From Macrostomum lignano (lineage: Eukaryota): a stretch of DNA of 64,000 nucleotides. The notes under the pieces were generated by a model. It saw only the letters and a program-made list of their open reading frames with translations. It searched no databases and was not told where the DNA came from. Positions 1,092 to 42,430 of this stretch are shown here, piece by piece. The position numbers and the translations under genes were made by a program. Where the stretch lies: NCBI GenBank assembly GCA_002269645.1, contig NIVC01002371.1:1-64000 (forward strand), read 5' to 3'. Every line of letters starts with the position of its first letter. The first letter of the stretch is position 1.

Positions 1092-2276
1092 CTAAGACAG
1101 CTTGCACGCGCTGCCGCCAAACTCTTTGCCCCGTTGGTCCAGTGCAATTTTCTCCTTTCAGCAAGAAAGTTCAAAGCAGATTTGGCAATGAAACTGGAAG
1201 TACCGCGCGGACACAACCGATTCGGTTTTCGTAGAATTTGTTCATCGATTTTTTCGAACTCCGGACCATCCAGACGGTGTTCGATTTTGAAATCGCGCCA
1301 AGCCTATCAACAATGCTGAGCACGTCGAGTTCCTCTTTAACTTTGAGCTCGGATTTCTCTGAAGGATTAGCTCGATAATGACTAGGGCCTCGACCATCAT
1401 CTGGCGCAGAGCGGGATTGGCGTCTCCCTGGCCAGAGTCGATTGGACTGCGAACACGAAGTTGGCATCGTTGCGGGACATGTCGTTCAGGCAGGGTGCTG
1501 CTCAATGAGGGTGTGCCCGATCCGGATGCCGCCTGAGCAGGCCTCTAGAACGCCGTAGACGCCTTCGTAGAAACCGGACGCACTCGCAGAGGCCAGCCGT
1601 CGATACGCCGCTGCCAGTAGGGATGGCGCGACTGCCGATGGTCCAGGATGGACACTATTAGGGATTTCACCTGGGCGGGTGGGAGACGGTTGCGGTTGAT
1701 GAAGATTGTGTGGTTTTATCAGAACTAATTAGTGTAGGGACTGCCACTGAGCAGCGCACACAAGATACGTAGGCTGAGGCACACGCTCACAAAGGTTTTT
1801 CAGCGGCCCTGACTCTACATGTAAGGGATGTACATTCTATCTTGGAGATTAGCGCTCATTAGCATAATCAGTCACCAATAAAATATGTGCTGTCGGCGTA
1901 GGAACAGGGAGATAGGGAGAAGGGGTAGGTGAGACAGGGGAGGGGGGAGCGATGGAAAGGAGAGACGGAGGGACAGTAAGGAGGGAATGACAGTAAAGGA
2001 AATGGAGAGAGGGAGACAGGGAGAGAGAGGGGGAAGCAGGGAGAGGAGAGAACGGGAGAGAAGAGAGGGAGAGACAGGAGAGAGGGAAGAGAGAGATGGA
2101 GAGGGAGAGAAGAGAGAGGGGAGAGAGGAGAGGGAGGAGAGAGACGGAAGGGAGAGAGGGAGAGAAAAGAGAGGGAGAAAAAGAGAGAAGAGAGAGAGAG
2201 AGAAGGGAGAGGAGAGAGGAAGGGAGAGAGAGGAGAGGGAGAGGGAAGAAGAGAGAGGAAGAGAAAAGAGAAGGAG

Positions 2277-2347
<71 letters not shown>

Positions 2348-5300
2348 GAGAGGAGAGAGGGAAGGGAGAGAGGGAGAGGGAGAGGGAGAGGAAGAGAGAG
2401 AGAGGAGAGAAAGAGAAGAGAGGGGAGAGGGAGGAGAGGGGAAAGGGAGGAGGGAGGGAGAGGAGAGAGAAGGGGGGAGAAGAGAGAGAAGGGGGGAGAG
2501 GGAGAGAGAAGGGGAGAGGAGAGAGAAGGAGAGGGAGAGGAGAGAGAAGGAAGAGGGAGAGGAGAGAGAAGGGAGAGAGGAGAGGAGAGAGAAGGGAGAG
2601 GGAGAGGAGAGAGAAGGGGAGGGAGAGGAGAGAGAAGGGAGAGGAGAGGAGAGAGAAGGGAGAGGGAGAGGAGAGAGAAGGGGAGGGAGAGGAGAGAGAG
2701 GGAGAGGGAGAGGAGAGAGAAGGAAGAGGGAGAGGAGAGAGAAGGGAGAGGGAGAGGAGAGAAGGGAGGGAGAGGAGAGAGAAGGGGGAGAGGAGAGAGA
2801 AGGGGGAGAGGGAGAGGAGAGAGAAGGGGGAGGGAGAGGAGAGAGAAGGGGGGAGAGGAGAGAGAAGGGGGAGGGAGAGGAGAGAGAAGGAGGGAGAGGA
2901 GAGAGAAGGGGGAGAGGGAGAGGAGAGAGAAGGGGGAGGGAGAGGAGAGAGAAGGGAGAGGGAGAGGAGAGAGAAGGGGGAGAGGAGAGAGAAGGGGGAG
3001 AGGGAGAGGAGAGAGAAGGGAGGGGAGGAGAGAGAAGGGGGGAGAGGAGAGAGAAGGGGAGGGAGAGGAGAGAGAAGGAGGGAGAGGAGAGAGAAGGGGG
3101 AGAGGGAGAGGAGAGAGAAGGGGAGGAGAGGAGAGAGAAGGGAGAGGAGAGGAGAGAGAAGGGGAGAGGGAGAGGAGAGAGAAGGGGGAGATGAGAGAGA
3201 AGGGGGAGGAGAGGAGAGAGAAGGGGGAGAGGAGAGAGAAGGGAGAGGGAGATGAGAGAGAAGGGGGAGGGAGAGGAGAGAGAAGGGGGAGGGAGAGGAG
3301 AGAGAAGGGTGAGGGAGAGGAGAGAGAAGGCGGAGGGAGAGGAGAGAGAAGGGGGAGGGAGAGGAGAGAGAAGGGTGAGGGAGAGGAGAGAGAAGGGGGA
3401 GGGAGAGGAGAGAGAAGGGAGAGGGAGATGAGAGAGAAGGGGGAGGGAGAGGAGAGAGAAGGGGGAAGGAGATGAGAGAGAAGGGAGAGGGAGATGAGAG
3501 AGAAGGGGGAGGGAGAGGAGAGAGAAGGGAGAGGGAGAGGAGAGAGAAGGGAGAGGGAGAGGAGAGAGAAGGGAGAGGGAGAGGAGAGAGAAGGGGGAGG
3601 GAGAGGAGAGAGAAGGGAGAGGGAGAGGAGAGAGAAGGGGGAGGGAGAGGAGAGAGACATTAGATTGCAGACAGTAAAATCAGTGAGAAGCAGGCAAATA
3701 GAATAAGGTAAAAAACCTTATACGGCGACAGATTCTGCAGTATCTTGCAGCCGCCGAACAGCGGATCGTTGACGTTGGCCAACTCAATATCCAGAGCGTC
3801 AATCAGAGGGTCCAGTCTGATGTAGTGAATGCCACGGAACAGCACGCTGTCTCGGCAGATCAGCGAGCCTAGAAACAGAATCAGCTCCTGAAGCAGCACA
3901 GCCTTGCCAGACGGTCCCGGTGGATAGTGAGCGTAGAGAATCTGGCAGAGCTCCTTGGGTGTCAGCGGCCTGTCAATCACAATGTCCGACCCGATGATGA
4001 TCCGCTTGCCAGCCACGATAACATTGGACAGGGAGGGCGCGAGGCTGTCCACCTCTTTGCGTAGGATGGCCGAGGCATAGCGAACGATGGCCCAGCGCTG
4101 TTGAACCCCGGCAGTCCGGCTCATCTCCTCAAGGCGCTGAGCCACCGTCTCATTGGCGCCTGGCATTGAGGTGTTATGGTGGGGATTCTATGAGTCTAGC
4201 CTTGAGGGTTTGAAAAGTTTGAGAGGACTGATCAGGGATTTAAAAAAATAGCTGGAGCATACTGGGGAATTAACTTTGAGGATCTGAAGGGGAATTAAGT
4301 TTGAGGATCTGAGGGGAATTAACTTTGAGGATCTGAAGGGGAATTAAGTTTGATGATCTGAGGGGAATTAAGTTTGAGGATCTGAGGGGAATTAAGTTTG
4401 AGGATCCGAGGGGAATTAAGTTTGAGGATCTGAGGGAATTAAGTTTGAGGATCTGAGGGGATTAAGTTTGAGGATCTGAGGGAATTAAGTTTGAGGATCT
4501 GAGGGAATTAAGTTTGAGGATCTGAAGGGGAATTAAGTTTGAGGATCTGAGGGGAATTAAGTTTGAGGATCTGAGGGGAATTAAGTTTGAGGATCTGAGG
4601 GGAATTAAGTTTGAGGATCTGAGGGGATTAAGTTTGAGGATCTGAGGGGAATTAAGTTTGAGGATCTGAGGGAATTAAGTTTGAGGATCTGAGGGGAATT
4701 AAGTTTTAGGATCTGAGGGGAATTAGGTTTGAAGATCTGGAGGGAAATTAAGTTTGAGGATCTGGAGGGAATTTAAGATCAAAGATTGGGAAATTAAGTT
4801 TCAGGGTTTTCGAGAATAAATTAGAGGATTTCAGGGGCATGTCAGTGATGAGGAATCTAATTTTGGAAATTGTTATCAAGGATTGTAAAGATTGTATTGC
4901 ATCATGGTCAAATTTAAACAACGCACCAGGCAGAACATAATCAGCGCCGTGCCTGTCAACCAGCATGTGCAGCAGTTGAGTCTTTGGCCCCATATTAAGC
5001 GACGCTGTGTCGATAAGCTGGCAAAGCTGCTCAGAATTGCTGGACTCAACCCGTCTTGTATCAATCCATTCTTCCTGCTCAATGGCCACCGCGGCGTGAC
5101 CTTGAATGTTCATCAGGGAGCGGAACGATTTCTCAACGCTGAGCTCCTCAACGCTGGGCAGGTCGCGAAATGCGTGATTATGATCCTGCAGGTAGTCCAG
5201 GTGGTCCACGCAGGCGCTAGCGAGAAGATTCTGCGCTCGGCCGAGCAGGACTCGAACGTCGTTGACCCAGCCGCTACGCATGCTGGTGAGAAAGGCGATG

Positions 5301-15574: not shown

Positions 15575-16357
15575 AGATCAGGTGAGTCAGGTGACTCTCA
15601 GGTATTGGTCAGGTGATTGTCCGATAATGGTCAGGTGATTGTCAGGTAATGGTCAGGTGATTGTCAGGTAATGGTCAGGTGATTGTCAGGTAATGGTCAG
15701 GTGATTGTCAGGTATTGGTCACGTGATTGTCAGGTATTGGTCAGGTGATTGTCAGGTATTGGTCACGTGATTGTCAGGTGATTGTCAGGTATTGGTCAGG
15801 TGATTGTCAGGTATTGGTCAGGTGATTGTCAGGTAATGGTCAGGTGATTGTAAGGTAATGGTCAGGTGATTGTCAGGTAATGGTCAGGTGATTGTAAGGT
15901 AATGGTCAGGTGATTGTCAGGTAATGGTCAGGTGATTGTCAGGTAATGGTCAGGTGATTGTCAGGTATTGGTCACGTGATTGTCAGGTGATTGTCAGGTA
16001 TTGGTCAGGTGATTGTCAGGTATTGGTCACGTGATTGTCAGGTGATTGTCAGGTATTGGTCAGGTGATTGTCAGGTATTGGTCACGTGATTGTCAGGTGA
16101 TTGTCAGGTATTGGTCAGGTGATTGTCAGGTATTGGTCAGGTGATTGTCAGGTGATTGTCAGGTGATTGTCAGGTATTGGTCAGGTGATTGTCAGGTATT
16201 GGTCAGGTGATTGTCAGGTATTGGTCAGGTGATTGTCAGGTATTGGTCAGGTGATTGTCAGGTATTGGTCACGTGATTGTCAGGTATTGGTCAGGTGATT
16301 GTCAGGTATTGGTCAGGTGATTGTCAGGTGATTGTCAGGTATTGGTCAGGTGATTGT
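15575..16357. repeat. 11/22 bp minisatellite (tcaggtgattgtcaggtattgg) between RPUSD2 and the RING gene
   Basis: Direct inspection. Confidence 0.95.
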
Positions 16358-16600: not shown

Positions 16601-17027
16601 TTAAACAAAGCTAGAACAGTCGAAGTAATCATCAGCCCAGTCGGGCAGCGGGGCACAATAGTCAAAGTCCGGGCCGCGATATCTGGCAGCGTGCAGAAAC
16701 AGCACCAATTCGTTATGCCGAGGATCTCTGTAAAGTCGGTTCTGCTGAATCTGAATGCAATCTTCGCAGTGCGGATCGCTGCGCCAATGCTCACAGTTGT
16801 AGCGCTGGTCCGGGTTGGGTCGGTCGACAAGTCTGTAGCAGACAGCGTCGGACAGTCTCGGTCGTTTAGCGGCCACGTCTGCTGAGTCTTTGTCGTCATC
16901 AAGAAAGTCTTTAGTCCGCAGGCTTAATAGGAAATTATCGCTGTCGTGTAGTCGCATTAAATCTGCTAGCAGCTGCTCATTGGGCTTGCCGAATCTGAAG
17001 CGTGGGGGAGGGGAAGGAATCTAGGCA

Positions 17028-17089
<62 letters not shown>

Positions 17090-17130
17090 GGTCTGTCTGT
17101 CTGTCTGTCTGTCAATCTGTCTGTCTGTCG

Positions 17131-17217
<87 letters not shown>

Positions 17218-17636
17218 AGTCTGTCTGTCTGTCTGTCAGTCTATTTATCCATCTATTTGTCAGTCTATTTATCCATCTATCTGTCAGTCTATTTATCCAT
17301 CTATTTGTCAGTCTATTTATCCATCTATTTGTCAGTCTATTTATCTATCTGTCAGTCTGTCTGTCTGTCTGTCTGTCAGTCTATTTATCTATCTGTCTGT
17401 CAGTCTGTCTGTCTGTCTGTCAGTCTGTCTGTCAGTCTGTCAGTCTATTTATCCGTCTATCTGTCAGTCTATTTATCTGTCTATCTGTCTGTCTGTCTGT
17501 CAGTCTATCTGTCTATCTGTCTATCTGTCTATCTATCCATCTGTCTATCTGTCTATCTATCTGTCAGTCTATCTGTCAGTCTATCTATCCATCCATCAAT
17601 CAATCAGCCCAGTAGATAGAACAGATCCTATCTATG

Positions 17637-17674
<38 letters not shown>

Positions 17675-20600
17675 ATCTATCCATAAACCCAGTAATTAAT
17701 CAATATACATCTACAATCTCTCTATCTGTCAATCAGCGCTGTCGCAGCCCCTCACCTTCCGCCCCGGCCTTTCTCGGGTCCCCAGACCTCGCTATTATAA
17801 AGCGGATCGTTGGCGATAGGAAAGCCCAGGTACTGCAGGTGCACCCGCAGCTGGTGGGTCCGCCCAGTCAGCGGCTGGCATTCAACTAAACTGGTGCGGC
17901 CATTGTAAGACAGCCGACGAAACAAAGACTTGCTGGGTTTGCCGCCTTCGGCCTCAGTTAGCACGGCTTGTAGGCCGAGTTTTCGACTCAGATGGCCAAG
18001 CGAACCGGAGCAGACGATTGCGTCATCTTCTCTAGAAATTAAATCGTCTTCTGTTTCGAGTTCTGCTGCTTCAGGAAATCTAAAAAGAAAAATAGATATT
18101 TTTTAGATGCGGATTCGAACTCAGAACTGTTATCGGGTTTATTTTATAAAATATGACACATTCTATACGAAGCGAAATGTGCTAATAAGCTACTGACAGT
18201 ATTTATTTTATTTTATGATATTTATAATTTTATTGACATTTGGGCGTTAAGAAGGTGAAAAAGATAAGAGCTCTCTGAGATGCTCAGTGGAGGAGATGCT
18301 GAGATGCCATAGGCTCAGGGGGGGGGGAGATGCTGAGATGCCATAGGCTCAGGGGGAGATGCTGAGATGCCATAGGCTCAGGGGGGGAGATGCTGAGATG
18401 CCATAGGCTCAGGGGGGGGGGGGGAGATGCTGAGATGCCATAGGCTCAGGGGGAGATGCTGAGATGCCATAGGCTCAGGGGGGGGGAGATGCTGAGATGC
18501 CATAGGCTCAGGGGGAGATGCTGAGATGCCATAGGCTCAGGGGGGGGGAGATGCTGAGATGCCATAGGCTCAGGGGGGGGGAGATGCTGAGATGCCATAG
18601 GCTCAGGGGGAGATGCTGAGATGCCATAGGCTCAGGGGGAGATGCTGAGATGCCATAGGCTCAGGGGGAGATGCTGAGATGCCATAGGCTCAGGGGGGGG
18701 AGATGCTGAGATGCCATAGGCTCAGGGGAGATGCTGAGATGCCATAGGCTCAGGGGGAGATGCTGAGATGCCATAGGCTCAGGGGGGGGGGGAGATGCTG
18801 AGATGCCATAGGCTCAGGGGGGGGGAGATGCTGAGATGCCATAGGCTCAGGGGGAGATGCTGAGATGCCATAGGCTCAGGGGGGGAGATGCTGAGATGCC
18901 ATAGGCTCAGGGGGGGAGATGCTGAGATGCCATAGGCTCAGGGGGAGATGCTGAGATGCCATAGGCTCAGGGGGAGATGCTGAGATGCCATAGGCTCAGT
19001 GGAGGAGATGCTGAGATGCCATAGGCTCAGGGGGGGGGGGAGATGCTGAGATGCCATAGGCTCAGGGGGAGATGCTGAGATGCCATAGGCTCAGGGGGGA
19101 GATGCTGAGATGCCATAGGCTCAGGGGGGGAGATGCTGAGATGCCATAGGCTCAGGGGGGAGATGCTGAGATGCCATAGGCTCAGGGGGGAGTTGCTGAG
19201 ATGCTATAGGCTCAAGATGACATAGGCTCAATGGGGGAGATGCTGAGATGCCATAGGTTCAAGATGACATAGGCTCAATGGGGGAGATGCTGAGATGCCA
19301 TAGGTTCAAGATGACATAGGTTCAATGGGGGAGATGCTGAGATGCCATAGGCTCAGGGGGAGATGCTGAGATGCCATAGGCTCAGGGGGGGGGGAGATGC
19401 TGAGATGCCATAGGCTCAGGGGGGAGTTGCTGAGATGCTATAGGCTCAAGATGACATAGGCTCAATGGGGGAGATGCTGAGATGCCATAGGTTCAAGATG
19501 ACATAGGCTCAATGGGGGAGTTGCTGAGATGCCATAGGTTCAAGATGACATAGGCTCAATGGGGGAGATGCTGAGATGCCATAGGCTCAAGATGACATAG
19601 GCTCAATGGGGGAGATGCTGAGATGCCATAGGCTCAAGATGACATAGGCTCAATGGGGGAGATGCTGAGATGCTATAGGCTCAAGATGACATAGGCTCAA
19701 TGGGGGAGATGCTGAGATGCCATAGGTTCAAGATGACATAGGCTCAATGGGGGAGTTGCTGAGATGCCATAGGTTCAAGACGACATAGGCTCAATGGGGG
19801 AGATGCTGAGATGCCATAGGCTCAAGATGACATAGGCTCAATGGGGGAGATGCTGAGATGCCATAGGTTCAAGATGACATAGGCTCAATGGGGGAGATGC
19901 TGAGATGCCATAGGCTCAAGATGACATAGGCTCAATGGGGGAGATGCTGAGATGCCATAGGCTCAAGATGACATAGGCTCAATGGGGGAGTTGCTGAGAT
20001 GCCATAGGCTCAAGGGGGGAGTTGCTGAGATGCCATAGGCTCAAGGGGGAGTTGCTGAGATGCCATAGGCTCAAGATGCCATAGGCTCAAAGGGGGGGAG
20101 TTGCTAAGATGCCATAGGCTCAAGGGGAGATGCTGAGATGCCATAGGCTCAAGATGCCATAGGCTCAAAGGGGGGGAGTTGCTGAGATGCCATAGGAAGG
20201 GGGAGTTGCTGAGATGCCATAGGCTCAAGATGCCATAGGCTCAAGGGGGAGTTGCTGAGATGCCATAGGCTCAATGGGGAAGATGCTGAGATGCCATGAC
20301 TCAATGGTAAAGTTGCTAAGATGCCAAAAGTGATCCCAAAAAGTTTAGCTTACCTTCCTTCAACCCTGGCCAGGTACCATTTCTGCACAGCCCGATCGCG
20401 AACCAGACCAGACAGAGTCGACGCTCTCTGAGACGATTTGCCAATAATTAAAACGCCAGAAGTCATGCGATCCAATCTGTGCACAATATGCAGACCGGTG
20501 CGCTTGTGCTCGCACTCTAACAAGTAGGACAGAGAGTTGCGATTGAATCTGCCGCACGGATGTATCGGCAGGCCTGGCGGCTTATTCACGACTAGGACTT

Positions 20601-23600
20601 CGCTGTCTTCGTGTACTATGTCCACTGGCGCGTCTGCAGGAATAGGGGGAATGGGGATGAGACTGGCTAAATACACTACTTTCTAAAGACAAAATGGGCA
20701 AACATGACGCAAAGGACAGCCTAAAGACACAAAGAAGGGCGAACAAAAGACACAAAGAAAGCCGAACAAAAGACACAAAGAAAGGCAAACAAAAGACAGA
20801 AAGAAGGGCGAACAAAAGACACACAGAAGGGCGAACAAAAGACACAAAGAAAGGCAAACAAAAGACACAAAGAAGGGCGAACAAAAGATACAAAGAAAGG
20901 CAAACAAAAGACAGAAAGAAGGGCGAACAAAAGACACAAAGAAGGGCGAACAAAAGATACAAAGAAAGGCAAACAAAAGACAGAAAGAAGGGCGAACAAA
21001 AGACACAAAGAAGGGCGAACAAAAGATACAAAGAAAGGCAAACAAAAGACAGAAAGAAGGGCGAACAAAAGACACAAAGAAGGGCGAACAAAAGACACAA
21101 AGAAGGGCGAACAAAAGATACAAAGAAAGGCAAACAAAAGACAGAAAGAAGGGCGAACAAAAGACACAAAGAAGGGCGAACAAAAGATACAAAGAAAGGC
21201 AAACAAAAGACAGAAAGAAGGGCGAACAAAAGACAGAAAGAAGGGCGAACAAAAGACAGAAAGAAGGGCGAACAAAAGATACAAAGAAAGGCAAACAAAA
21301 GACAAAGAAGGGCGAACAAAAGACACAAAGAAAGCCGAACAAAAGACACAAAAGGCAAACAAAAGACACACAGAAGGGCGAACAAAAGACACAAAGAAGG
21401 GCGAACAAAAGATACAAAGAAAGGCAAACAAAAGACAGAAAGAAGGGCGAACAAAAGACACAAAGAAGGGCGAACAAAAGATACAAAGAAAGGCAAACAA
21501 AAGACAGAAAGAAGGGCGAACAAAAGACACAAAGAAGGGCGAACAAAAGACACAAAGAAGGGCGAACAAAAGATACAAAGAAAGGCAAACAAAAGACAGA
21601 AAGAAGGGCGAACAAAAGACACAAAGAAGGGCGAACAAAAGATACAAAGAAAGGCAAACAAAAGACAGAAAGAAGGGCGAACAAAAGACAGAAAGAAGGG
21701 CGAACAAAAGATACAAAGAAAGGCAAACAAAAGACAGAAAGAAGGGCGAACAAAAGACACAAAGAAAGCCGAACAAAAGACACAAAAGGCAAACAAAAGA
21801 CACACAGAAGGGCGAACAAAAGACACAAAGAAGGGCGAACAAAAGACACAAAGGGCGAACAAAAGACACAAAGGGAGAACAAAAGATACAAAGAAAGGCA
21901 AACAAAAGACAGAAAGAAGGGCGAACAAAAGACACAAAGAAAGCCGAACAAAAGACACAAAAGGCAAACAAAAGACACACAGAAGGGCGAACAAAAGACA
22001 CAAAGAAGGGCGAACAAAAGATACAAAGAAAGGCAAACAAAAGACAGAAAGAAGGGCGAACAAAAGACACAAAGAAGGGCGAACAAAAGATACAAAGAAA
22101 GGCAAACAAAAGACAGAAAGAAGGGCGAACAAAAGACACAAAGAAGGGCGAACAAAAGACACAAAGAAGGGCGAACAAAAGATACAAAGAAAGGCAAACA
22201 AAAGACAGAAAGAAGGGCGAACAAAAGACACAAAGAAGGGCGAACAAAAGATACAAAGAAAGGCAAACAAAAGACAGAAAGAAGGGCGAACAAAAGACAG
22301 AAAGAAGGGCGAACAAAAGACAGAAAGAAGGGCGAACAAAAGATACAAAGAAAGGCAAACAAAAGACAGAAAGAAGGGCGAACAAAAGACACAAAGAAAG
22401 CCGAACAAAAGACACAAAAGGCAAACAAAAGACACACAGAAGGGCGAACAAAAGACACAAAGAAGGGCGAACAAAAGACACAAAGGGCGAACAAAAGACA
22501 CAAAGGGAGAACAAAAGATACAAAGAAGGGCGAAAAAAAGACACAAAGAAGGGCGAACAAAAGACACGAACATACAATGATACCCCTAGTAACTAACCTA
22601 GCACTGGCAGCTCGTGCCTGTGCACAGTTCTCTGAATGTGCTCATTGTGATCCAGAACGTGACCCTCTGCAGCGGGCTCGCTATTAATCGTGATTCGTTC
22701 AAGTTGAAAATCTCTGATCTAACTGAAACAAGGGATTAAAATAAAGTCAGTTCTTTTAAAATGACACAAAAAACATAGCAATCGGTTTCTAACTGAGACG
22801 AAGTCATTACCACAGCCTCCTCCGTAGTGCCTCTGTACTCGTCCAGAAGAACTTCTTTCAGCTTCTTGCCCAACCAACGCCGTTTGGTGTAGGTTGAATA
22901 GACAAAGTAGTACGGGTATACCTGGCGATTAGCGGTTGGGAACAGAAGTTTAGACAGCTGATTTATGGGGCGATGAATAGGTTTATGGGGCGATTCTTGA
23001 ATGGATTTATGGGGCGATTCTTGAAAAGGTTTATAGGGCGATTCTTGAAAAGGTTTATGGGGCGATTCTTGAATGGGTTTATGGGGCGATTCTTGAAAAG
23101 GTTTATGGGGCGATTCTTGAATGGGTTTATGGGGCGATTCTTGAAAAGGTTTATGGGGCGATTCTTAGATAGGTTAATGGGGCGATTCTTGAATAGGTTT
23201 ATGGGGCGATTCTTAGATAGGTTAATGGGGCGATTCTTGAATGGTTTTATGGGGCGATTCTTGAATGGGTTTATGGGGCGATTCTTGAAAAGGTATAATC
23301 TAGTGGAGGTTGCAGCCTAGTGGCCAGAGCGTCGGACTCACGACTGAAAGGTCGGGGGTTGGATTCTCAATTCCACTTGGAACGATTTGTGTCCTTGAGC
23401 AAGACACTTAACTCTGTATTGCTTCAGTTCACCCATCTGTAAAATGGGTGCCAGCATTAGCTGGGGTAATTGAGGGTTTGTGTGGCGACCCCCCAGTTCT
23501 TGGACTGAACAGCCGTACACAACCTTCAAATTCAACAGCTGTGGCCTACATCTGGCCATATAAATAGTAATTTATATATTTATTATTACACTAAATTAGT

Positions 23601-23918
23601 TTGATTTCCAGATACCTTAGGATTATTCTTATAAAAATGTACATCAATAAATTATTAATACGAGTACAACCCATAAAACCAAAGTGCACTCACTTTACGA
23701 AGACCATTTTCAAAGTAGAACTGTGGCTTAATATTAGACTCTTCAGAAGCATTAGCAACATTGTCTACTGTAGTGACTACTGAAAAGTCAGTAGTATCAG
23801 CAGTAGCAACAGTAGCAGCCATGCAAGCTGACCGTGATGCTGTCAATTTCAGATAGGCCTTAAAGCTTAAGTGTCTATGCAATCGCGCAAGGCACAGAAG
23901 CTGACTGCCGAAAATGCT
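16601..23918 (-). CDS. RPUSD2: RluA-family pseudouridine synthase (RPUSD2-like), 6 exons
   Basis: Exons: 23918 (first genomic ATG 23822)-23694, 22921-22811, 22718-22598, 20633-20354, 18079-17756, 16994-16601. Motifs [36 protein letters not shown], catalytic [33 protein letters not shown]. Confidence 0.93.
17028..17690. repeat. (TCTG/TCTA)n microsatellite in RPUSD2 intron 5
   Basis: Direct inspection. Confidence 0.95.
18280..20330. repeat. About 28-50 bp minisatellite (gatgctgagatgccataggctca + variable G run) in RPUSD2 intron 4
   Basis: Direct inspection. Confidence 0.96.
20700..22570. repeat. A-rich 22-23 bp minisatellite (aagaagggcgaacaaaagacac) in RPUSD2 intron 3
   Basis: Direct inspection; explains the overlapping spurious 600-aa ORFs. 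Confidence 0.96.
22960..23295. repeat. 27 bp minisatellite (ttatggggcgattcttgaa...) in RPUSD2 intron 1
   Basis: About 12 copies; 9-aa period in the ORF track. Confidence 0.93.
23305..23542 (+). mobile_element. tRNA-derived CORE-type SINE, copy 2 (most complete; antisense in RPUSD2 intron 1)
   Basis: A-box-like TAGTGGCCAGAGCG, B-box-like GGTTGGATTCTC, MIR-like CORE TGTGTCCTTGAGCAAGACACTTAACTC...CAGTTCACCCATCTGTAAAATGGG, tail TTCAAATTCAACAGCTGT. Confidence 0.88.
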
Positions 23919-24636
23919 CTGCAAAAATTATATTTTTTATTCGATATGAACTTTTATAATGCAACGAATGACAAGGAAAAAATTCATAAAGAAATTGGAT
24001 TTTACTGCAAAAATAGAAGAAAATCAGTTAGCTATTTTTGCTAAAAATCAGTTACTCATATTTCATTTTTTCAAGACTCATTTTTAGTATATAGGACTAG
24101 CCATCAGATTTTCATATTAACAAATATTTAATTATTAGGAATAGTATTCCCACAATTGCAAATGATGCAAACAAACTTTTTGATCCAATTTATTCCAATG
24201 TAGAGATGCCATGATCCTGACTATGTGATTAGAAGTATATTTAATTTTAGATTTTACACTGCATGAGTTACATAGACCCCTTTATTACTGATTTAATAAA
24301 CTACACATAATTGTTTTATGGTTGCTTCTAACTTGTTTGATTGGTAGATGATGAAACCACTAAAATAAGATAATAAATAACAAATTGGTCAAGACTCAGG
24401 TGATAATAGCAAATAGAGTCCAACCAAGATCAGATTTTCGTTTTTGAGCAAGATCATACAAGAATTTTATTAAAAAATTGGGATCAAGAATAAGTTGATG
24501 AAGAATTGCAGATCTAGCTGTGGAATTGTAAATTTGTATAGGAAGAATAGTACTTATGATAAGATATACATAAAATTTAGCCTATATTATACACAAATAA
24601 ATAATAGTACAAAAGAAATGGCTCAAATGTACTATC

Positions 24637-39809: not shown

Positions 39810-41000
39810 AGTTTGAGAGGAAAGGAAAGGAGAAGAAGGGAGAGGAAAGGAGAGAGAGAGAGAAGAGGAGAGGAGAGAGAGGAGAGGAGAGGAGAGGAGA
39901 GGAGAGGAGAGGAGAGGAGAGGAGAGGAGAGGAGGGGAGAGAAGGGGAGAGGAGAGGGGACAGAAGAAGGGAGAGGAGGGGAGAGGAGAAGAGAGGAGGG
40001 GGAGGAAGGGAGAGGAGGGGAGAGGAGGGGAGAGGAGGGGAGAGGAGGGGAGAGGAGAAGAGAGGAGGGGGGAGGAAGGGAGAGGAGGGGAGAGGAGGGG
40101 AGAGGAGGGGAGAGGAGGGGAGAGGAGGGGAGAGGAGGGGAGTGGAAGGGAGAGGAGAAGAGAGAGGAGGGGAGGAGGGGAGAGGAGGGGAGAGGAGGGG
40201 AGAGAAGAGAGAGGAGGGGAGGAGGGGAGAGGAGGGGAGAGGAGGGGAGAGGAGGGAGAGAAGAGAGAGGAGGGGAGAGGAGAAGAGAGAAGAGGGGAGA
40301 GGAGGGGAGAGGAGGGGAGAGGAGAAGAAAGAGGAGGGGAGGAGGGGAGAGGAGGGGAGAGAAGGGGGAAAGGAGGGGAGTGGAAGGGAGAGGAGAGGAG
40401 AGAGGAGGGGAGAAGGGAGAGGAGAAGAGAGAGGAGGGGAGGAGGGGAGAGGAGGGGAGAGGAGGGGAGAGAAGAGAGAGGAGGGGAGGAGGGGAGAGGA
40501 GGGAGAGGAGGGGAGAGGAGGGAGAGAAGAGAGAGGAGGGGAGAGGAGAAGAGAGAGGAGGGGAGAGGAGGGGAGAGGAGGGGAGAGGAGAAGAGAGAGG
40601 AGGGGAGGAGGGGAGAGGAGGGGAGAGGAGGGGAGAGGAGAAGAGAGAGGAGGGGAGAGGAGAAGAGAGAGGAGGGGAGAGGAGAAGAGAGAGGAGGGGA
40701 GGAGGGGAGAGGAGGGGAGTGGAAGGGAGAGGAGAAGAGAGAGGAGGGGAGGAGGGAGAGGAGGGGAGAGGAGGGGAGAGGAGAGAGGAGGGGAGGAGGG
40801 GAGGAGGGGAGAGGAGGGGAGAGGAGGGGAGAGAAGAGAGAGGAGGGGAGGAGGGAGAGAGAGAGGAGGGGAGAGGAGGGGAGAGGAGGGGAGAGGAGAA
40901 GAGAGAGGAGGGGAGGGAGGGGAGAGGAGGGGAGAGGAGGGGAGAGGAGAAGAGAGAGGAGGGGAGAGGAGAAGAGAGAGGAGGGGAGAGAAGAGGGGAC
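39810..41000. repeat. GA-rich array (gaggagggga)
   Basis: Direct inspection. Confidence 0.95.
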
Positions 41001-41711
41001 AGGTCCAGGGGAGGAGACTCACAGAGAAGCAGAGAGAGAGATTGGATTGCAAAGCCAGCACACAGCAACAGTGGAAATTGCTCAGAACACATGCAATATA
41101 GCGTTCCACCCTCAGGCTGGCAGGCTAATAAGTTATACAGTTGAGAAATACTCTCAGCCAAGCAGAGATATGCTTGTAAGGCAGTATGCAGATTCCAGCG
41201 CAATTATTAATTATTAGTCCTCCGATAAGCCGGAGATTGCCACTATCAGCCTTCATCTTAGCTTTGCCAAGGGATTTGATGTGTTTTTTACATTACCTTA
41301 CTTATTCAGAAAAGGAAAAACACACCTTGGCAACAAAGACAATCTGCTTGCATGGTAAGTAGCCAAAAAGCAAACAGATTCATTGTTTGCCAACGCAATG
41401 CATACATGCACAATCATTTTTAGCTGCCTTTGTTTCCACTCGTGTCGAAGCTACAAGCAGTTTCCAGCGAGAGACAGCTGACCAAAAGTCCCACCCGGTT
41501 CCAAACTCACACGGATTTTCCATACTCCATCAGCTGACAAATTGTCTGGCAAAAATTGGTTTCCGCGTTAGCAACAACACCTCTCGGAGAAATATTTGAC
41601 GGGTTGTTAGGAAAAGAAAATGGATTGAAGTTTACGGGGCATTCATCATTAGTGTGCTTGGTTGCGTTTCACATCATCTCCCTCTCCACTCTTGGCACTC
41701 ACTTCAGCCCC

Positions 41712-42430
41712 TATTCCCCTCTCTGTTCCCCTCTCTGCTCCCCTTTCTGTTCCCCTCTCTGCTCCCCTCCCTGTTCCCCTCTCTGTTCCCCTCTCTGTTC
41801 CCTTCTCTGTTCCCCTCTCTGCTCCCCTCTCTGTTCCCTTCTCTGTTCCCCTTTCTGTTCCCCTCTCTGTTCCCCTCTCTGTTCCCTTCTCTGTTCCCTT
41901 CTCTGTTCCCCTCTCTGTTCCCCTCTCTGCTTCCCTCTCTGTTCCCCTCTCTGTTCCCTTCTCTGTTCCCCTCTCTGTTCCCTTCTCTGTTCCCCTCTCT
42001 GTTCCCCTCTCTGTTCCCCTCTCTGTTCCCCTCTCTGCTTCCCTCTCTGTTCCCCTCTCTGTTCCCTTCTCTGTTCCCCTCTCTGTTCCCTTCTCTGTTC
42101 CCCTCTCTGCTTCCCTCTCTGTTCCCCTCTCTGTTCCCTTCTCTGTTCCCCTCTCTGTTCCCCTCTCTGTTCCCTCTCTGCTTCCCTCTCTGTTCCCCTC
42201 TCTGCTCCCCTCTCTGCTCCCCTCTCTGTTCCCCTCTCTGTTCCCCTCTCTGTTCCCCTCTCTGCTCCACTCTTTGTTCCCCTCTCTGCTCCACTCTTTG
42301 TTCCCCTCTTTGTTCTTCTCTCTGTTCCCCTCTCTGTTCCCCTCTCTGTTCCCCTCTCTGTTCCCCTCTCTGCTCCACTCTTTGTTCCCCTCTTTGTTCT
42401 TCTCTCTGTTTCCCTCTCTGCTCCCCTCCA
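41712..42430. repeat. 12 bp pyrimidine-rich array (ctctctgttccc)
   Basis: Direct inspection. Confidence 0.95.

What the first reader, a model, noticed from the sequence alone, without database searches (positions are those of the whole stretch)
23823..23924. RPUSD2 has a Met-less 32-codon presequence that a spliced-leader AUG would switch on
Seen: the acceptor tttttgcag is followed in phase 0 by [32 protein letters not shown] before the first ATG (23822). An in-frame TAA lies just upstream (23930-23928), so no genomic ATG can translate this stretch. The peptide has 3 Arg, 2 Lys and no Asp/Glu, like a mitochondrial transit peptide. Established: flatworm SLs end in AUG, which can act as the initiator. 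Inference: trans-splicing yields a mitochondrial isoform, while initiation at 23822 gives a non-mitochondrial one.
Basis: partly seen in the sequence, partly recalled or inferred. Interest (0 to 1): 0.7.

Follow-up and report, generated by a model that had tools for sequence, protein, structure and literature searches.

The report
Spliced-leader AUG opens RPUSD2 presequence
In the flatworm Macrostomum lignano, the tRNA-modifying enzyme RPUSD2 has a 32-codon open stretch with no start codon of its own, which the AUG at the end of the spliced leader would translate into a probable mitochondrial targeting peptide; this is a neat but unproven new example of two known mechanisms.

Summary
On the minus strand, TTTTTGCAG (23927-23919) is followed by 32 sense codons (23918-23823) that run in frame into the first genomic ATG (23822). 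An in-frame TAA lies at 23930-23928.

The window is M. lignano scaffold NIVC01002371.1. GenBank already lists this gene (PAA58471.1, Mlig008671g2) as a 5'-partial CDS starting exactly at 23918. The M. lignano spliced leader (SL) ends in ...TTGCATG. Use of the acceptor is supported only indirectly. The annotation pipeline sets 5' ends from SL reads. In the paralogous scaffold the acceptor reads TTTTGCATG|AGC, which looks like an imprint of SL-bearing reads left by RNA-seq polishing.

An open, in-frame leader of this length is not rare (about 10% by chance). The peptide is acid-free, carries five Arg/Lys and is rich in Ala/Leu/Arg/Ser (joint about 0.5% of random open frames). Its amphipathicity is unremarkable.

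The strongest support is comparative. About half of 122 animal orthologues have an acid-free N-terminus. In 32 of them it ends exactly at an internal Met. Human RPUSD2 modifies both cytosolic and mitochondrial tRNAs.

Verdict: plausible, partly supported, and a new member of a known kind. Both isoforms more likely come from leaky scanning on one trans-spliced mRNA than from a splicing switch.

The parts
23919..23927 (-). 3' splice acceptor TTTTTGCAG; proposed SL trans-splice site (the junction lies between 23919 and 23918)
   Evidence: Read directly. It matches the top trans-splice acceptor motif [T/C]TNCAG of M. lignano (PMC8629364). The GenBank CDS starts at the next base. The paralogue has TTTTGCATG at the same place.
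23928..23930 (-). In-frame TAA that closes the frame upstream of the acceptor
   Evidence: No ATG lies between it and the acceptor.
23823..23918 (-). 32-codon extension without a Met ([32 protein letters not shown]); candidate mitochondrial presequence once headed by the SL AUG
   Evidence: Translation. Identical to the first 32 residues of PAA58471.1. GC is 0.48, against 0.27 in the outron and 0.32 in the 3'UTR. 96/96 nt are identical in the paralogue.
23820..23822 (-). First genomic ATG, the start of the 452-aa short isoform; context CUUGC-AUG-G
   Evidence: UniProt A0A1I8HUL8 (P0122), from the paralogous copy, starts at the equivalent Met.
23694..23822 (-). RPUSD2 exon 1 coding part ([14 protein letters not shown]...GLRK), donor AAA|GTGAGT
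   Evidence: My exon model equals the GenBank protein exactly (100% identity, 100% coverage).
22811..22921 (-). RPUSD2 exon 2
22598..22718 (-). RPUSD2 exon 3
20354..20633 (-). RPUSD2 exon 4 (contains the HRLD catalytic motif of the RluA family)
17756..18079 (-). RPUSD2 exon 5
16601..16994 (-). RPUSD2 exon 6 with stop TAA at 16603-16601

Best explanation
The RPUSD2 pre-mRNA of Macrostomum lignano is trans-spliced to the 35-nt spliced leader at the acceptor ending at 23919. The leader's last three bases, AUG, then sit directly in front of AGC at 23918. They are in frame with 32 sense codons and with the first genomic AUG at 23822.

Ribosomes that start at the SL AUG would make a 485-residue protein. 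Its first 33 residues ([33 protein letters not shown]) would act as a mitochondrial presequence and send the enzyme to mitochondrial tRNAs. Ribosomes that scan past the SL AUG would start at 23822 and make the 452-residue cytosolic or nuclear form. The SL AUG has U at -3 and A at +4, which is a weak context by the vertebrate rule.

Shown here: the anatomy, the identity of the gene, the SL sequence (from the literature), and the family-wide layout of presequence followed by Met. Supported indirectly: use of the acceptor. Inferred: initiation at the SL AUG, leaky scanning, and import.
For: (1) Anatomy is confirmed. The SL AUG and the 23822 AUG would be the first two AUGs of the mature mRNA, with no other ATG between them.

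(2) The SL is CGGTCTCTTACTGCGAAGACTCAATTTATTGCATG (PMC8629364).

(3) GenBank PAA58471.1 (Mlig008671g2, 'partial', 484 aa) equals the extension plus my exon model exactly. The annotation pipeline TBONE cuts 5' ends at peaks of SL-containing reads (PMC5730564).

(4) In paralogous scaffold NIVC01000702.1 all three annotated 5' ends are preceded by CATG. RPUSD2 reads TTTTGCATG|AGC where the window has TTTTTGCAG|AGC. The RING gene reads TTTTCATG|CC where the window has TTTTCCAG|CC. The assembly was polished by Pilon with RNA-seq reads. These are best read as imprints of SL-exon junction reads.

(5) The peptide has 0 Asp/Glu, 5 Arg/Lys and 19/33 Ala/Leu/Arg/Ser. This combination occurs in about 0.5% of random open frames. 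By eye, R-H-L|S and R-S|A fit the R-3 and R-2 cleavage patterns.

(6) 58 of 122 orthologues have an acid-free N-terminus of at least 20 residues. In 32 of them a Met sits at the boundary, for example ...RHLA|MEAAG and ...PLKN|MENN. Short isoforms that start at that Met are also annotated.

(7) Human RPUSD2 installs pseudouridine 31/32 in both cytosolic and mitochondrial tRNAs (PMC12716993). MitoFates finds a targeting signal in two of its isoforms (PMC13022450).

(8) The flatworm SL AUG is an accepted initiator. It is in frame in 28% of S. mansoni trans-spliced transcripts and required for more than 40 cDNAs (Cheng 2006, as cited in PMC9851317; PMC3510090).

(9) The short isoform's N-terminus ([14 protein letters not shown]) is acidic and nothing like a presequence.
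Against: - No SL-junction read, transcript or protein starting with M-SIFG was seen. Exact look-ups of the 485-aa, 452-aa and 262-aa forms found nothing.
- An open in-frame leader of this length has about a 10% chance. It is common nearby: the neighbouring phosphorylase-kinase-like gene also has an in-frame open SL extension of 10 codons.
- The hydrophobic moment is ordinary, reached by 28% of shuffles.
- A composition score trained on orthologue presequences puts the peptide at the bottom of the positives, and 24% of random open frames reach it.
- Conservation is uninformative. The extension is 0/96 different between paralogues, but introns differ by only 2% and the CDS by 1.6%.
- The imprint reading of the paralogue is an inference. 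If the T is real, that copy has no AG acceptor.
- Start-codon context rules for M. lignano are unknown.
Confidence: 0.45

Rival explanations
1. The 96 nt are simply a 5' leader that happens to be open and in frame with the SL AUG. Some N-terminally extended protein may be made, but the extension has no targeting role. Mitochondrial tRNA pseudouridines 31/32 in this worm are made by another enzyme, or not at all.
For: About 10% of such leaders are open and in frame by chance. One of the two neighbouring trans-spliced genes also has an in-frame open SL extension. In S. mansoni 28% of trans-spliced transcripts have the SL AUG in frame. Amphipathicity and the orthologue-trained composition score are unremarkable. 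Paralogue conservation is uninformative.
Against: The combination of no acid, at least 5 Arg/Lys and richness in Ala/Leu/Arg/Ser is rare among random open frames, about 0.5%. The layout of a presequence of about 33 residues, then Met, then an acidic region matches many orthologues. The short form has no other possible source of a targeting signal. GC content of the leader is like the CDS (0.48) and unlike the 3'UTR (0.32).
Confidence: 0.35
2. The acceptor at 23919 is used, at least partly, in cis. An unannotated upstream exon supplies a genomic ATG in frame with the extension, so the SL AUG is not needed.
For: In parasitic flatworms trans- and cis-splicing often share acceptors (PMC12582326). 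TBONE would cut away upstream exons at an SL peak. About 7 kb of unannotated sequence lies upstream, before a divergent gene.
Against: The genome-guided and de novo transcript models gave no upstream exon, and the CDS is flagged partial. The upstream 1.3 kb is AT-rich (GC 0.27) with no coding-like ORF on this strand. The paralogue model starts at the same base.
Confidence: 0.07
3. The extension is translated from the SL AUG but serves another purpose, such as a different sorting signal or a stability element, and not mitochondrial import.
For: No import predictor or experiment was available. The N-terminal [10 protein letters not shown] stretch is moderately hydrophobic.
Against: A tRNA pseudouridine synthase has no known role in the secretory pathway. 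The family-wide precedent is mitochondrial.
Confidence: 0.08

Closest known systems
Flatworm SL 3'-terminal AUG used as initiator methionine (Cheng et al. 2006, J Biol Chem 281:733; 'slORFs', PMC9851317; Echinococcus survey, PMC3510090)
   Same: The SL ends in AUG. After trans-splicing it is in frame with an ORF that has no start codon of its own for its N-terminal part. In E. granulosus the in-frame cases include mitochondrial proteins: an NADH-ubiquinone oxidoreductase subunit and COX6B.
   Different: Here a good genomic AUG follows 32 codons later, so two isoforms are possible. The SL-dependent part would be a whole targeting peptide. No dual-localised enzyme of this kind was reported in the papers read here.
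Dual targeting of isoleucyl-tRNA synthetase in Trypanosoma brucei by alternative trans-splicing (PMC3273800)
   Same: SL trans-splicing decides whether a mitochondrial presequence is part of the translated mRNA of an enzyme needed in both compartments.
   Different: In T. brucei two acceptor sites include or exclude a genomic AUG plus presequence. The SL gives no start codon. Here a single acceptor is enough and the SL itself supplies the AUG.
Human RPUSD2, and animal orthologues with an N-terminal presequence followed by an internal Met (PMC12716993, PMC13022450)
   Same: Same enzyme family and the same layout: an acid-free basic N-terminal peptide of about 25-40 residues, an internal Met, then an acidic region. 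The enzyme acts on both cytosolic and mitochondrial tRNAs.
   Different: In those species the first AUG is genomic. In M. lignano it is absent from the genome, and TAA lies upstream.
Alternative in-frame AUGs for dual localisation of tRNA enzymes (yeast MOD5, TRM1, CCA1, from my own knowledge; genome-wide screen in PMC3575844)
   Same: Two in-frame starts on one mRNA. The longer product carries the mitochondrial signal.
   Different: Both AUGs are genomic in those cases.

Membership tests
RPUSD2 (RluA-family pseudouridine synthase) | PseudoU_synth_2 domain (PF00849) | tested here: met
   The precomputed Pfam hit is on the identical GenBank protein.
RPUSD2 (RluA-family pseudouridine synthase) | Catalytic HRLD motif of the RluA family | tested here: met
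   [11 protein letters not shown] is present in exon 4 of the translation. The motif assignment comes from my own knowledge.
RPUSD2 (RluA-family pseudouridine synthase) | Best full-length matches are proteins named RPUSD2, including the N-terminal YYxENGLRKVYPYY block and the C-terminal LHAxRYxGPxFxY block | tested here: met
   One search gives 40-45% identity over about 85% of the query to RPUSD2 of fishes, insects and birds. The shared blocks are visible.
RPUSD2 (RluA-family pseudouridine synthase) | Pseudouridine 31/32 synthase activity on tRNA | not testable with these tools
   Needs an enzyme assay or pseudouridine mapping after knock-down.
SL-AUG-initiated reading frame (slORF) of flatworms | The species' SL ends in AUG | tested here: met
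   The 35-nt SL ...TTGCATG is reported in PMC8629364. There is no SL gene in the window.
SL-AUG-initiated reading frame (slORF) of flatworms | SL-exon junction reads at the acceptor | tested here: inconclusive
   No reads were accessible. Three lines are indirect. The GenBank 5'-partial CDS starts at 23918. TBONE defines 5' ends from SL reads. The paralogue carries CATG at this and two other 5' ends after RNA-seq polishing.
SL-AUG-initiated reading frame (slORF) of flatworms | The SL AUG is in frame with the main ORF with no stop between | tested here: met
SL-AUG-initiated reading frame (slORF) of flatworms | Ribosomes initiate at the SL AUG on this mRNA | not testable with these tools
   Needs ribosome profiling or N-terminal proteomics.
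Mitochondrial matrix-targeting presequence | No acidic residues, net positive charge, rich in Ala/Leu/Arg/Ser | tested here: met
   0 Asp/Glu, 5 Arg/Lys plus 2 His, and 19/33 Ala/Leu/Arg/Ser. The joint frequency is 0.5-0.6% in two null sets.
Mitochondrial matrix-targeting presequence | Amphipathic helix | tested here: inconclusive
   The maximum 18-residue hydrophobic moment is 0.39, reached by 28% of open shuffles.
Mitochondrial matrix-targeting presequence | Positive call by a trained predictor (TargetP, MitoFates) | not testable with these tools
   No such predictor was available. A home-made composition score was inconclusive.
Mitochondrial matrix-targeting presequence | Import into mitochondria and cleavage | not testable with these tools
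   Needs an experiment.
Dual targeting by alternative translation initiation | Two in-frame AUGs with the targeting peptide between them and no other AUG in between | tested here: met
   This holds only if trans-splicing occurs at 23918.
Dual targeting by alternative translation initiation | Weak context of the first AUG that allows leaky scanning | tested here: inconclusive
   The SL AUG reads UUGC-AUG-A and the second AUG reads UUGC-AUG-G. Context rules for M. lignano are unknown.

The most novel reading that the evidence does not exclude
M. lignano has no genomic start codon for the mitochondrial isoform of RPUSD2. Targeting of this tRNA pseudouridine synthase to mitochondria would then depend entirely on the SL RNA donating the initiator AUG. 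An ancestral layout of presequence followed by Met would have been kept while its first AUG was handed over to trans-splicing. The output could possibly be tuned by choosing between the acceptors at 23919 and 24005. At 24005 the SL AUG would sit directly before TAA.
Probability: 0.4. Interest if true: 0.55.

Novelty: new member of a known kind. Interest (0 to 1): 0.35.

Why it matters
If confirmed, this would be a clean case in which the conserved AUG at the end of flatworm spliced leaders has a concrete job. It would supply the start codon for an organelle-targeting peptide of an enzyme needed in two compartments. That bears on the old question of why flatworm SLs keep a terminal AUG.

There is also a practical point. 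M. lignano proteins flagged 'partial' at an SL site may in fact be complete once the SL AUG is added. Gene models that start at the first genomic ATG may be missing targeting signals.

M. lignano is transgenic-competent, so the test is feasible.

Tried and rejected
- Searched the window for the SL sequence itself with up to 3 mismatches: none. No SL RNA gene is here.
- Looked for transcript-derived proteins carrying M+SIFG. An N-terminal search found only the paralogue and distant species. Exact look-ups of the 485-aa, 452-aa and 262-aa forms found nothing.
- Tried to use paralogue conservation as a test of coding. The extension is 96/96 identical, but the two copies are too close (introns 2%, CDS 1.6%, outron 5.5%) for this to discriminate.
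- Built a composition log-odds score from 23 non-redundant orthologue presequences. The extension scores -0.12 bits per residue, the lowest of the positives, and 24% of random open frames reach it. I dropped it as uninformative. The positives are mostly AT-rich insect sequences.
- The hydrophobic moment is not distinctive.
- Looked for gene-level trans-splicing tables naming Mlig008671 or Mlig018862 in papers and supplements: none held.
- Cheng et al. 2006 could not be read directly, so I cite it through PMC9851317 and PMC3510090.
- I considered that the paralogue's genomic ATG (TTTTGCATG|AGC) is a real 'hard-wired' start. I rejected this as the main reading. All three annotated 5' ends on that scaffold carry CATG, and the assembly was polished with RNA-seq.
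- No other Macrostomum species turned up in the protein searches, so conservation in relatives could not be tested.

Full report
OBSERVATION. Reading the minus strand and translating it confirms the finding at every coordinate.
- TTTTTGCAG occupies 23927-23919.
- AGC at 23918 opens [32 protein letters not shown] (32 codons, 23918-23823).
- The first ATG is at 23822-23820.
- A TAA at 23930-23928 lies in the same frame, with no ATG between it and the acceptor.
- The 96-nt leader has no ATG in any frame. The other two frames contain stops.

WHAT THE GENE IS. Six exons can be joined with canonical GT-AG borders into a 452-residue protein: 23822-23694, 22921-22811, 22718-22598, 20633-20354, 18079-17756 and 16994-16601. 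A database search with the extension plus this model returned a 484-residue protein at 100% identity and 100% coverage. It is named 'hypothetical protein BOX15_Mlig008671g2, partial [Macrostomum lignano]' (PAA58471.1). The next hits are RPUSD2 proteins of fishes, insects and birds at 40-45% identity over about 85% of the length. All carry PF00849. The locus look-up shows that the window is NIVC01002371.1 of assembly GCA_002269645.1 (Mlig_3_7) with identical coordinates. The public annotation already holds the open extension, as a CDS flagged 5'-partial that begins exactly at 23918.

IS THE ACCEPTOR A TRANS-SPLICE SITE? I could not see reads. Three indirect lines point the same way.
- First, TTGCAG fits [T/C]TNCAG, the top motif at 21,754 M. 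lignano trans-splice sites (PMC8629364).
- Second, the annotation pipeline (TBONE) sets 5' ends of genes from peaks of SL-containing reads that were trimmed and mapped. It then runs TransDecoder (PMC5730564). A model that starts at the first base after an AG, with a 5'-partial ORF and no upstream exon, is what that procedure yields at an SL site.
- Third, there is a paralogous copy (PAA protein Mlig018862g1, also 'partial', starting with the same SIFGSQ). It lies on NIVC01000702.1. There the acceptor reads TTTTGCATG|AGC, where the window has TTTTTGCAG|AGC.

On that same scaffold the downstream RING-finger gene has TTTTCATG|CCACTCC, where the window has TTTTCCAG|CCACTCC. The next gene, a phosphorylase-kinase-like gene, starts right after GGCTCATG. 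Four given bases before three 5' ends by chance is about (1/256)^3. CATG is the 3' end of the SL. Mlig_3_7 was polished with Pilon using RNA-seq reads mapped by STAR. The simplest reading is therefore that SL-exon junction reads overwrote the last bases of the outron (the 5' stretch that trans-splicing removes). If so, this is an accidental record of SL junctions at exactly this site. If the T is instead real, that copy has a genomic ATG at exactly the SL-AUG position, which would also argue that the extension is translated. I rate use of the acceptor for trans-splicing at about 0.85.

THE SPLICED LEADER AND THE FRAME. The M. lignano SL is CGGTCTCTTACTGCGAAGACTCAATTTATTGCATG. Joined to 23918, it gives AUG-AGC-AUU..., that is MSIFGSQ...[12 protein letters not shown].... 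In the mature mRNA the SL AUG and the 23822 AUG are the first two AUGs.

How special is this? 29% of dinucleotide-preserving shuffles of the leader stay open. With the 1/3 chance of being in frame, about one leader in ten would look like this. In S. mansoni the SL AUG is in frame in 28% of trans-spliced transcripts (Cheng 2006, cited in PMC9851317). Of the two neighbouring trans-spliced genes here, one has a 10-codon in-frame open extension. In the other, the SL AUG opens an 11-codon upstream ORF that ends at TAA. Openness alone therefore proves nothing.

IS THE PEPTIDE A PRESEQUENCE? With its Met, the 33-residue peptide has no Asp or Glu, 5 Arg/Lys plus 2 His, and 19 residues that are Ala, Leu, Arg or Ser. 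Taken one at a time, these values occur in 15%, 18% and 5% of open shuffles. Taken jointly they occur in 0.6% of shuffles and in 0.5% of 1,259 open 96-nt windows from this 64-kb sequence. I chose the features after seeing the peptide, so these figures are generous. The maximum helical hydrophobic moment (0.39) is reached by 28% of shuffles. A composition score trained on orthologue presequences was uninformative. By eye, R16-H-L|S and R30-S|A fit the loose R-3 and R-2 processing patterns, and F-K-A-Y-L fits the loose TOM20 pattern. The leader's GC (0.48) is like the CDS (0.51). It is unlike the outron (0.27), intron 1 (0.24) and the 3'UTR (0.32). No TargetP or MitoFates was available. On intrinsic evidence alone the case is suggestive only.

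COMPARATIVE EVIDENCE. This is the strongest part. Among 122 orthologues that start with Met, 58 have their first acidic residue at position 21-70. In 32 of those a Met lies within six residues before it. Examples come from teleosts, aphids, mosquitoes, bees and mites:
- MYLACFIPSRSIYKLLGPCFIYSQTKQRHLA|MEAAGK
- MVRRTGLGIQRFIHLFSKKLFAVPLIN|MENNIL
- MLLRAAISFVKSIKPSVFSKSLAPT|MEKQ
- MLKLIYWSNKISSVFRYPLLSNWLANKSAKLSNHKPVPG|MDQT

Short isoforms that start at that Met are annotated too, for example P0003 and P0071. The M. lignano arrangement is a 33-residue acid-free basic peptide, then Met, then an acidic low-complexity stretch. It is the same design, except that its first AUG is missing from the genome.

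Function fits as well. Human RPUSD2 installs pseudouridines 31/32 in both cytosolic and mitochondrial tRNAs (PMC12716993). In another study its knockout abolished three mitochondrial tRNA sites, and MitoFates predicted a targeting signal in two isoforms (PMC13022450). The yeast relatives Pus6 and Pus9 are listed for mitochondrial tRNA positions 31 and 32 (PMC9917222).

PARALOGUE CONSERVATION. The extension is 96/96 identical between the two copies. The outron differs by 5.5%, introns by about 2% and the CDS by 1.6%. Zero changes in 96 nt is unlikely at the outron rate (about 0.005). It is unremarkable at the intron rate (about 0.14), and there are no substitutions to classify. This test is inconclusive. 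No other Macrostomum species appeared in the searches.

MECHANISM. I commit to the following.
- The pre-mRNA is trans-spliced at 23919/23918. This is indirect; I rate it about 0.85.
- Part of the ribosomes start at the SL AUG (context UUGC-AUG-A) and make the 485-residue precursor, which is imported into mitochondria. This is inferred.
- The rest scan on to the 23822 AUG (UUGC-AUG-G) and make the 452-residue form. This is also inferred.

The precursor's last 600 nt of outron hold 11 ATGs, so it would be a poor template for the short form. The overall probability of the full chain is about 0.45. The main rival (0.35) is a fortuitously open leader with no targeting role. A cis-spliced upstream exon (0.07) and some other role for the extension (0.08) remain possible.

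COMPARISON WITH WHAT IS KNOWN. The SL AUG as initiator in flatworms is established (Cheng 2006, cited in PMC9851317, PMC3510090 and PMC12582326). In E. granulosus the in-frame cases include mitochondrial proteins. Control of a presequence by trans-splicing is known from T. brucei isoleucyl-tRNA synthetase, where two acceptors include or exclude a genomic AUG (PMC3273800). Dual targeting by two in-frame AUGs is classical for tRNA enzymes (yeast MOD5, TRM1 and CCA1, from my own knowledge; PMC3575844). This case combines them. It is a new member of a known kind, not a new principle. The combination of an SL-donated start codon with the mitochondrial isoform of a dual-localised enzyme was not described in the papers I could read.

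VERDICT. Interest is moderate (0.35). The decisive data, SL-junction reads and a localisation test, already exist or are easy to obtain for this model organism.

Noticed in passing
L001:9996-10000 (NIVC01000702.1) against window 23921-23919; L001 about 17181-17188 against window 15478-15471; window 10173-10170 and L001 about 22486-22489: On the paralogous scaffold all three annotated 5' ends are preceded by CATG, the last four bases of the SL. In two cases CATG replaces the CAG acceptor seen in the window. The window itself has CATG 6 nt before the annotated start of the phosphorylase-kinase-like gene. Mlig_3_7 was polished with RNA-seq, so these look like SL-read imprints that destroy true acceptors and create false genomic ATGs. 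This could affect many trans-spliced genes in the assembly.
   Followed up: partly
window 15478-15425 (minus strand); RING-finger gene CDS about 15425-14250: A RING-finger gene lies 1.1 kb downstream of RPUSD2 on the same strand, behind its own TTTTCCAG acceptor. In the paralogue it is Mlig018862g2 and RPUSD2 is g1, so they share one transcriptional unit and form a likely two-gene operon. Here the SL AUG would open an 11-codon upstream ORF (MPLQAAAASAA) that ends at TAA 15 nt before the main ATG.
   Followed up: partly
window 10169-10137 (minus strand): The phosphorylase-kinase-like gene (Glyco_hydro_15 domain; the paralogue product also hits KPBB_C) is also annotated 5'-partial. The SL AUG would be in frame and add MPPHQAAEQRT before its first genomic Met. 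This second in-frame open SL extension within 14 kb shows how common the arrangement is.
   Followed up: partly
window 24013-24002 (minus strand): A second TTTTTGCAG lies 86 nt upstream, followed directly by TAA. Trans-splicing there would give AUG-UAA and exclude the extension from translation. In the paralogue this site reads GCAT and is lost.
   Followed up: no
window 23827-23819 against the SL 3' end: The genomic start has the same five bases before and including the AUG as the SL: CUUGC-AUG against AUUGC-AUG. This may be chance. It means both AUGs share their upstream context and differ only at +4 (G against A).
   Followed up: no
L001:14610-14616: In the Mlig_3_7 paralogue, exon 5 reads ATTTTTTAAG where the window has ATTTCTAGAG. 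This gives an in-frame TAA and a 261-residue product. The UniProt protein from the older assembly (A0A1I8HUL8), of the same allele type, reads through (LISREDD). The cause is an assembly error or a polymorphism in a T run, or else a decaying copy.
   Followed up: partly
window 16000-16356, 17028-17586, 18282-20326, 20723-22567, 22974-23294: The introns and the 3' flank of RPUSD2 are mostly tandem arrays. There is a 23-nt unit x 81 copies (1.8 kb), units of 29-47 nt over 2 kb, (TCTG)n of 560 bp, a 24-nt unit x 13 copies and a 22-nt unit x 16 copies. These explain the extreme GC and AT skews in the composition profile.
   Followed up: no
window about 23300-23560 (intron 1): A GC-richer block of about 260 nt inside the AT-rich intron looks like a short interspersed repeat. 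ARAGORN finds no tRNA in the window.
   Followed up: no
window 2001-4000, 20001-22000, 40001-42000: Windows of 2 kb with very strong strand skews, for example GC skew 0.85 and AT skew 0.82 at 2001-4000. These are probably further satellite arrays. Only the 20-22 kb block was inspected (it is the 23-nt array listed above).
   Followed up: no
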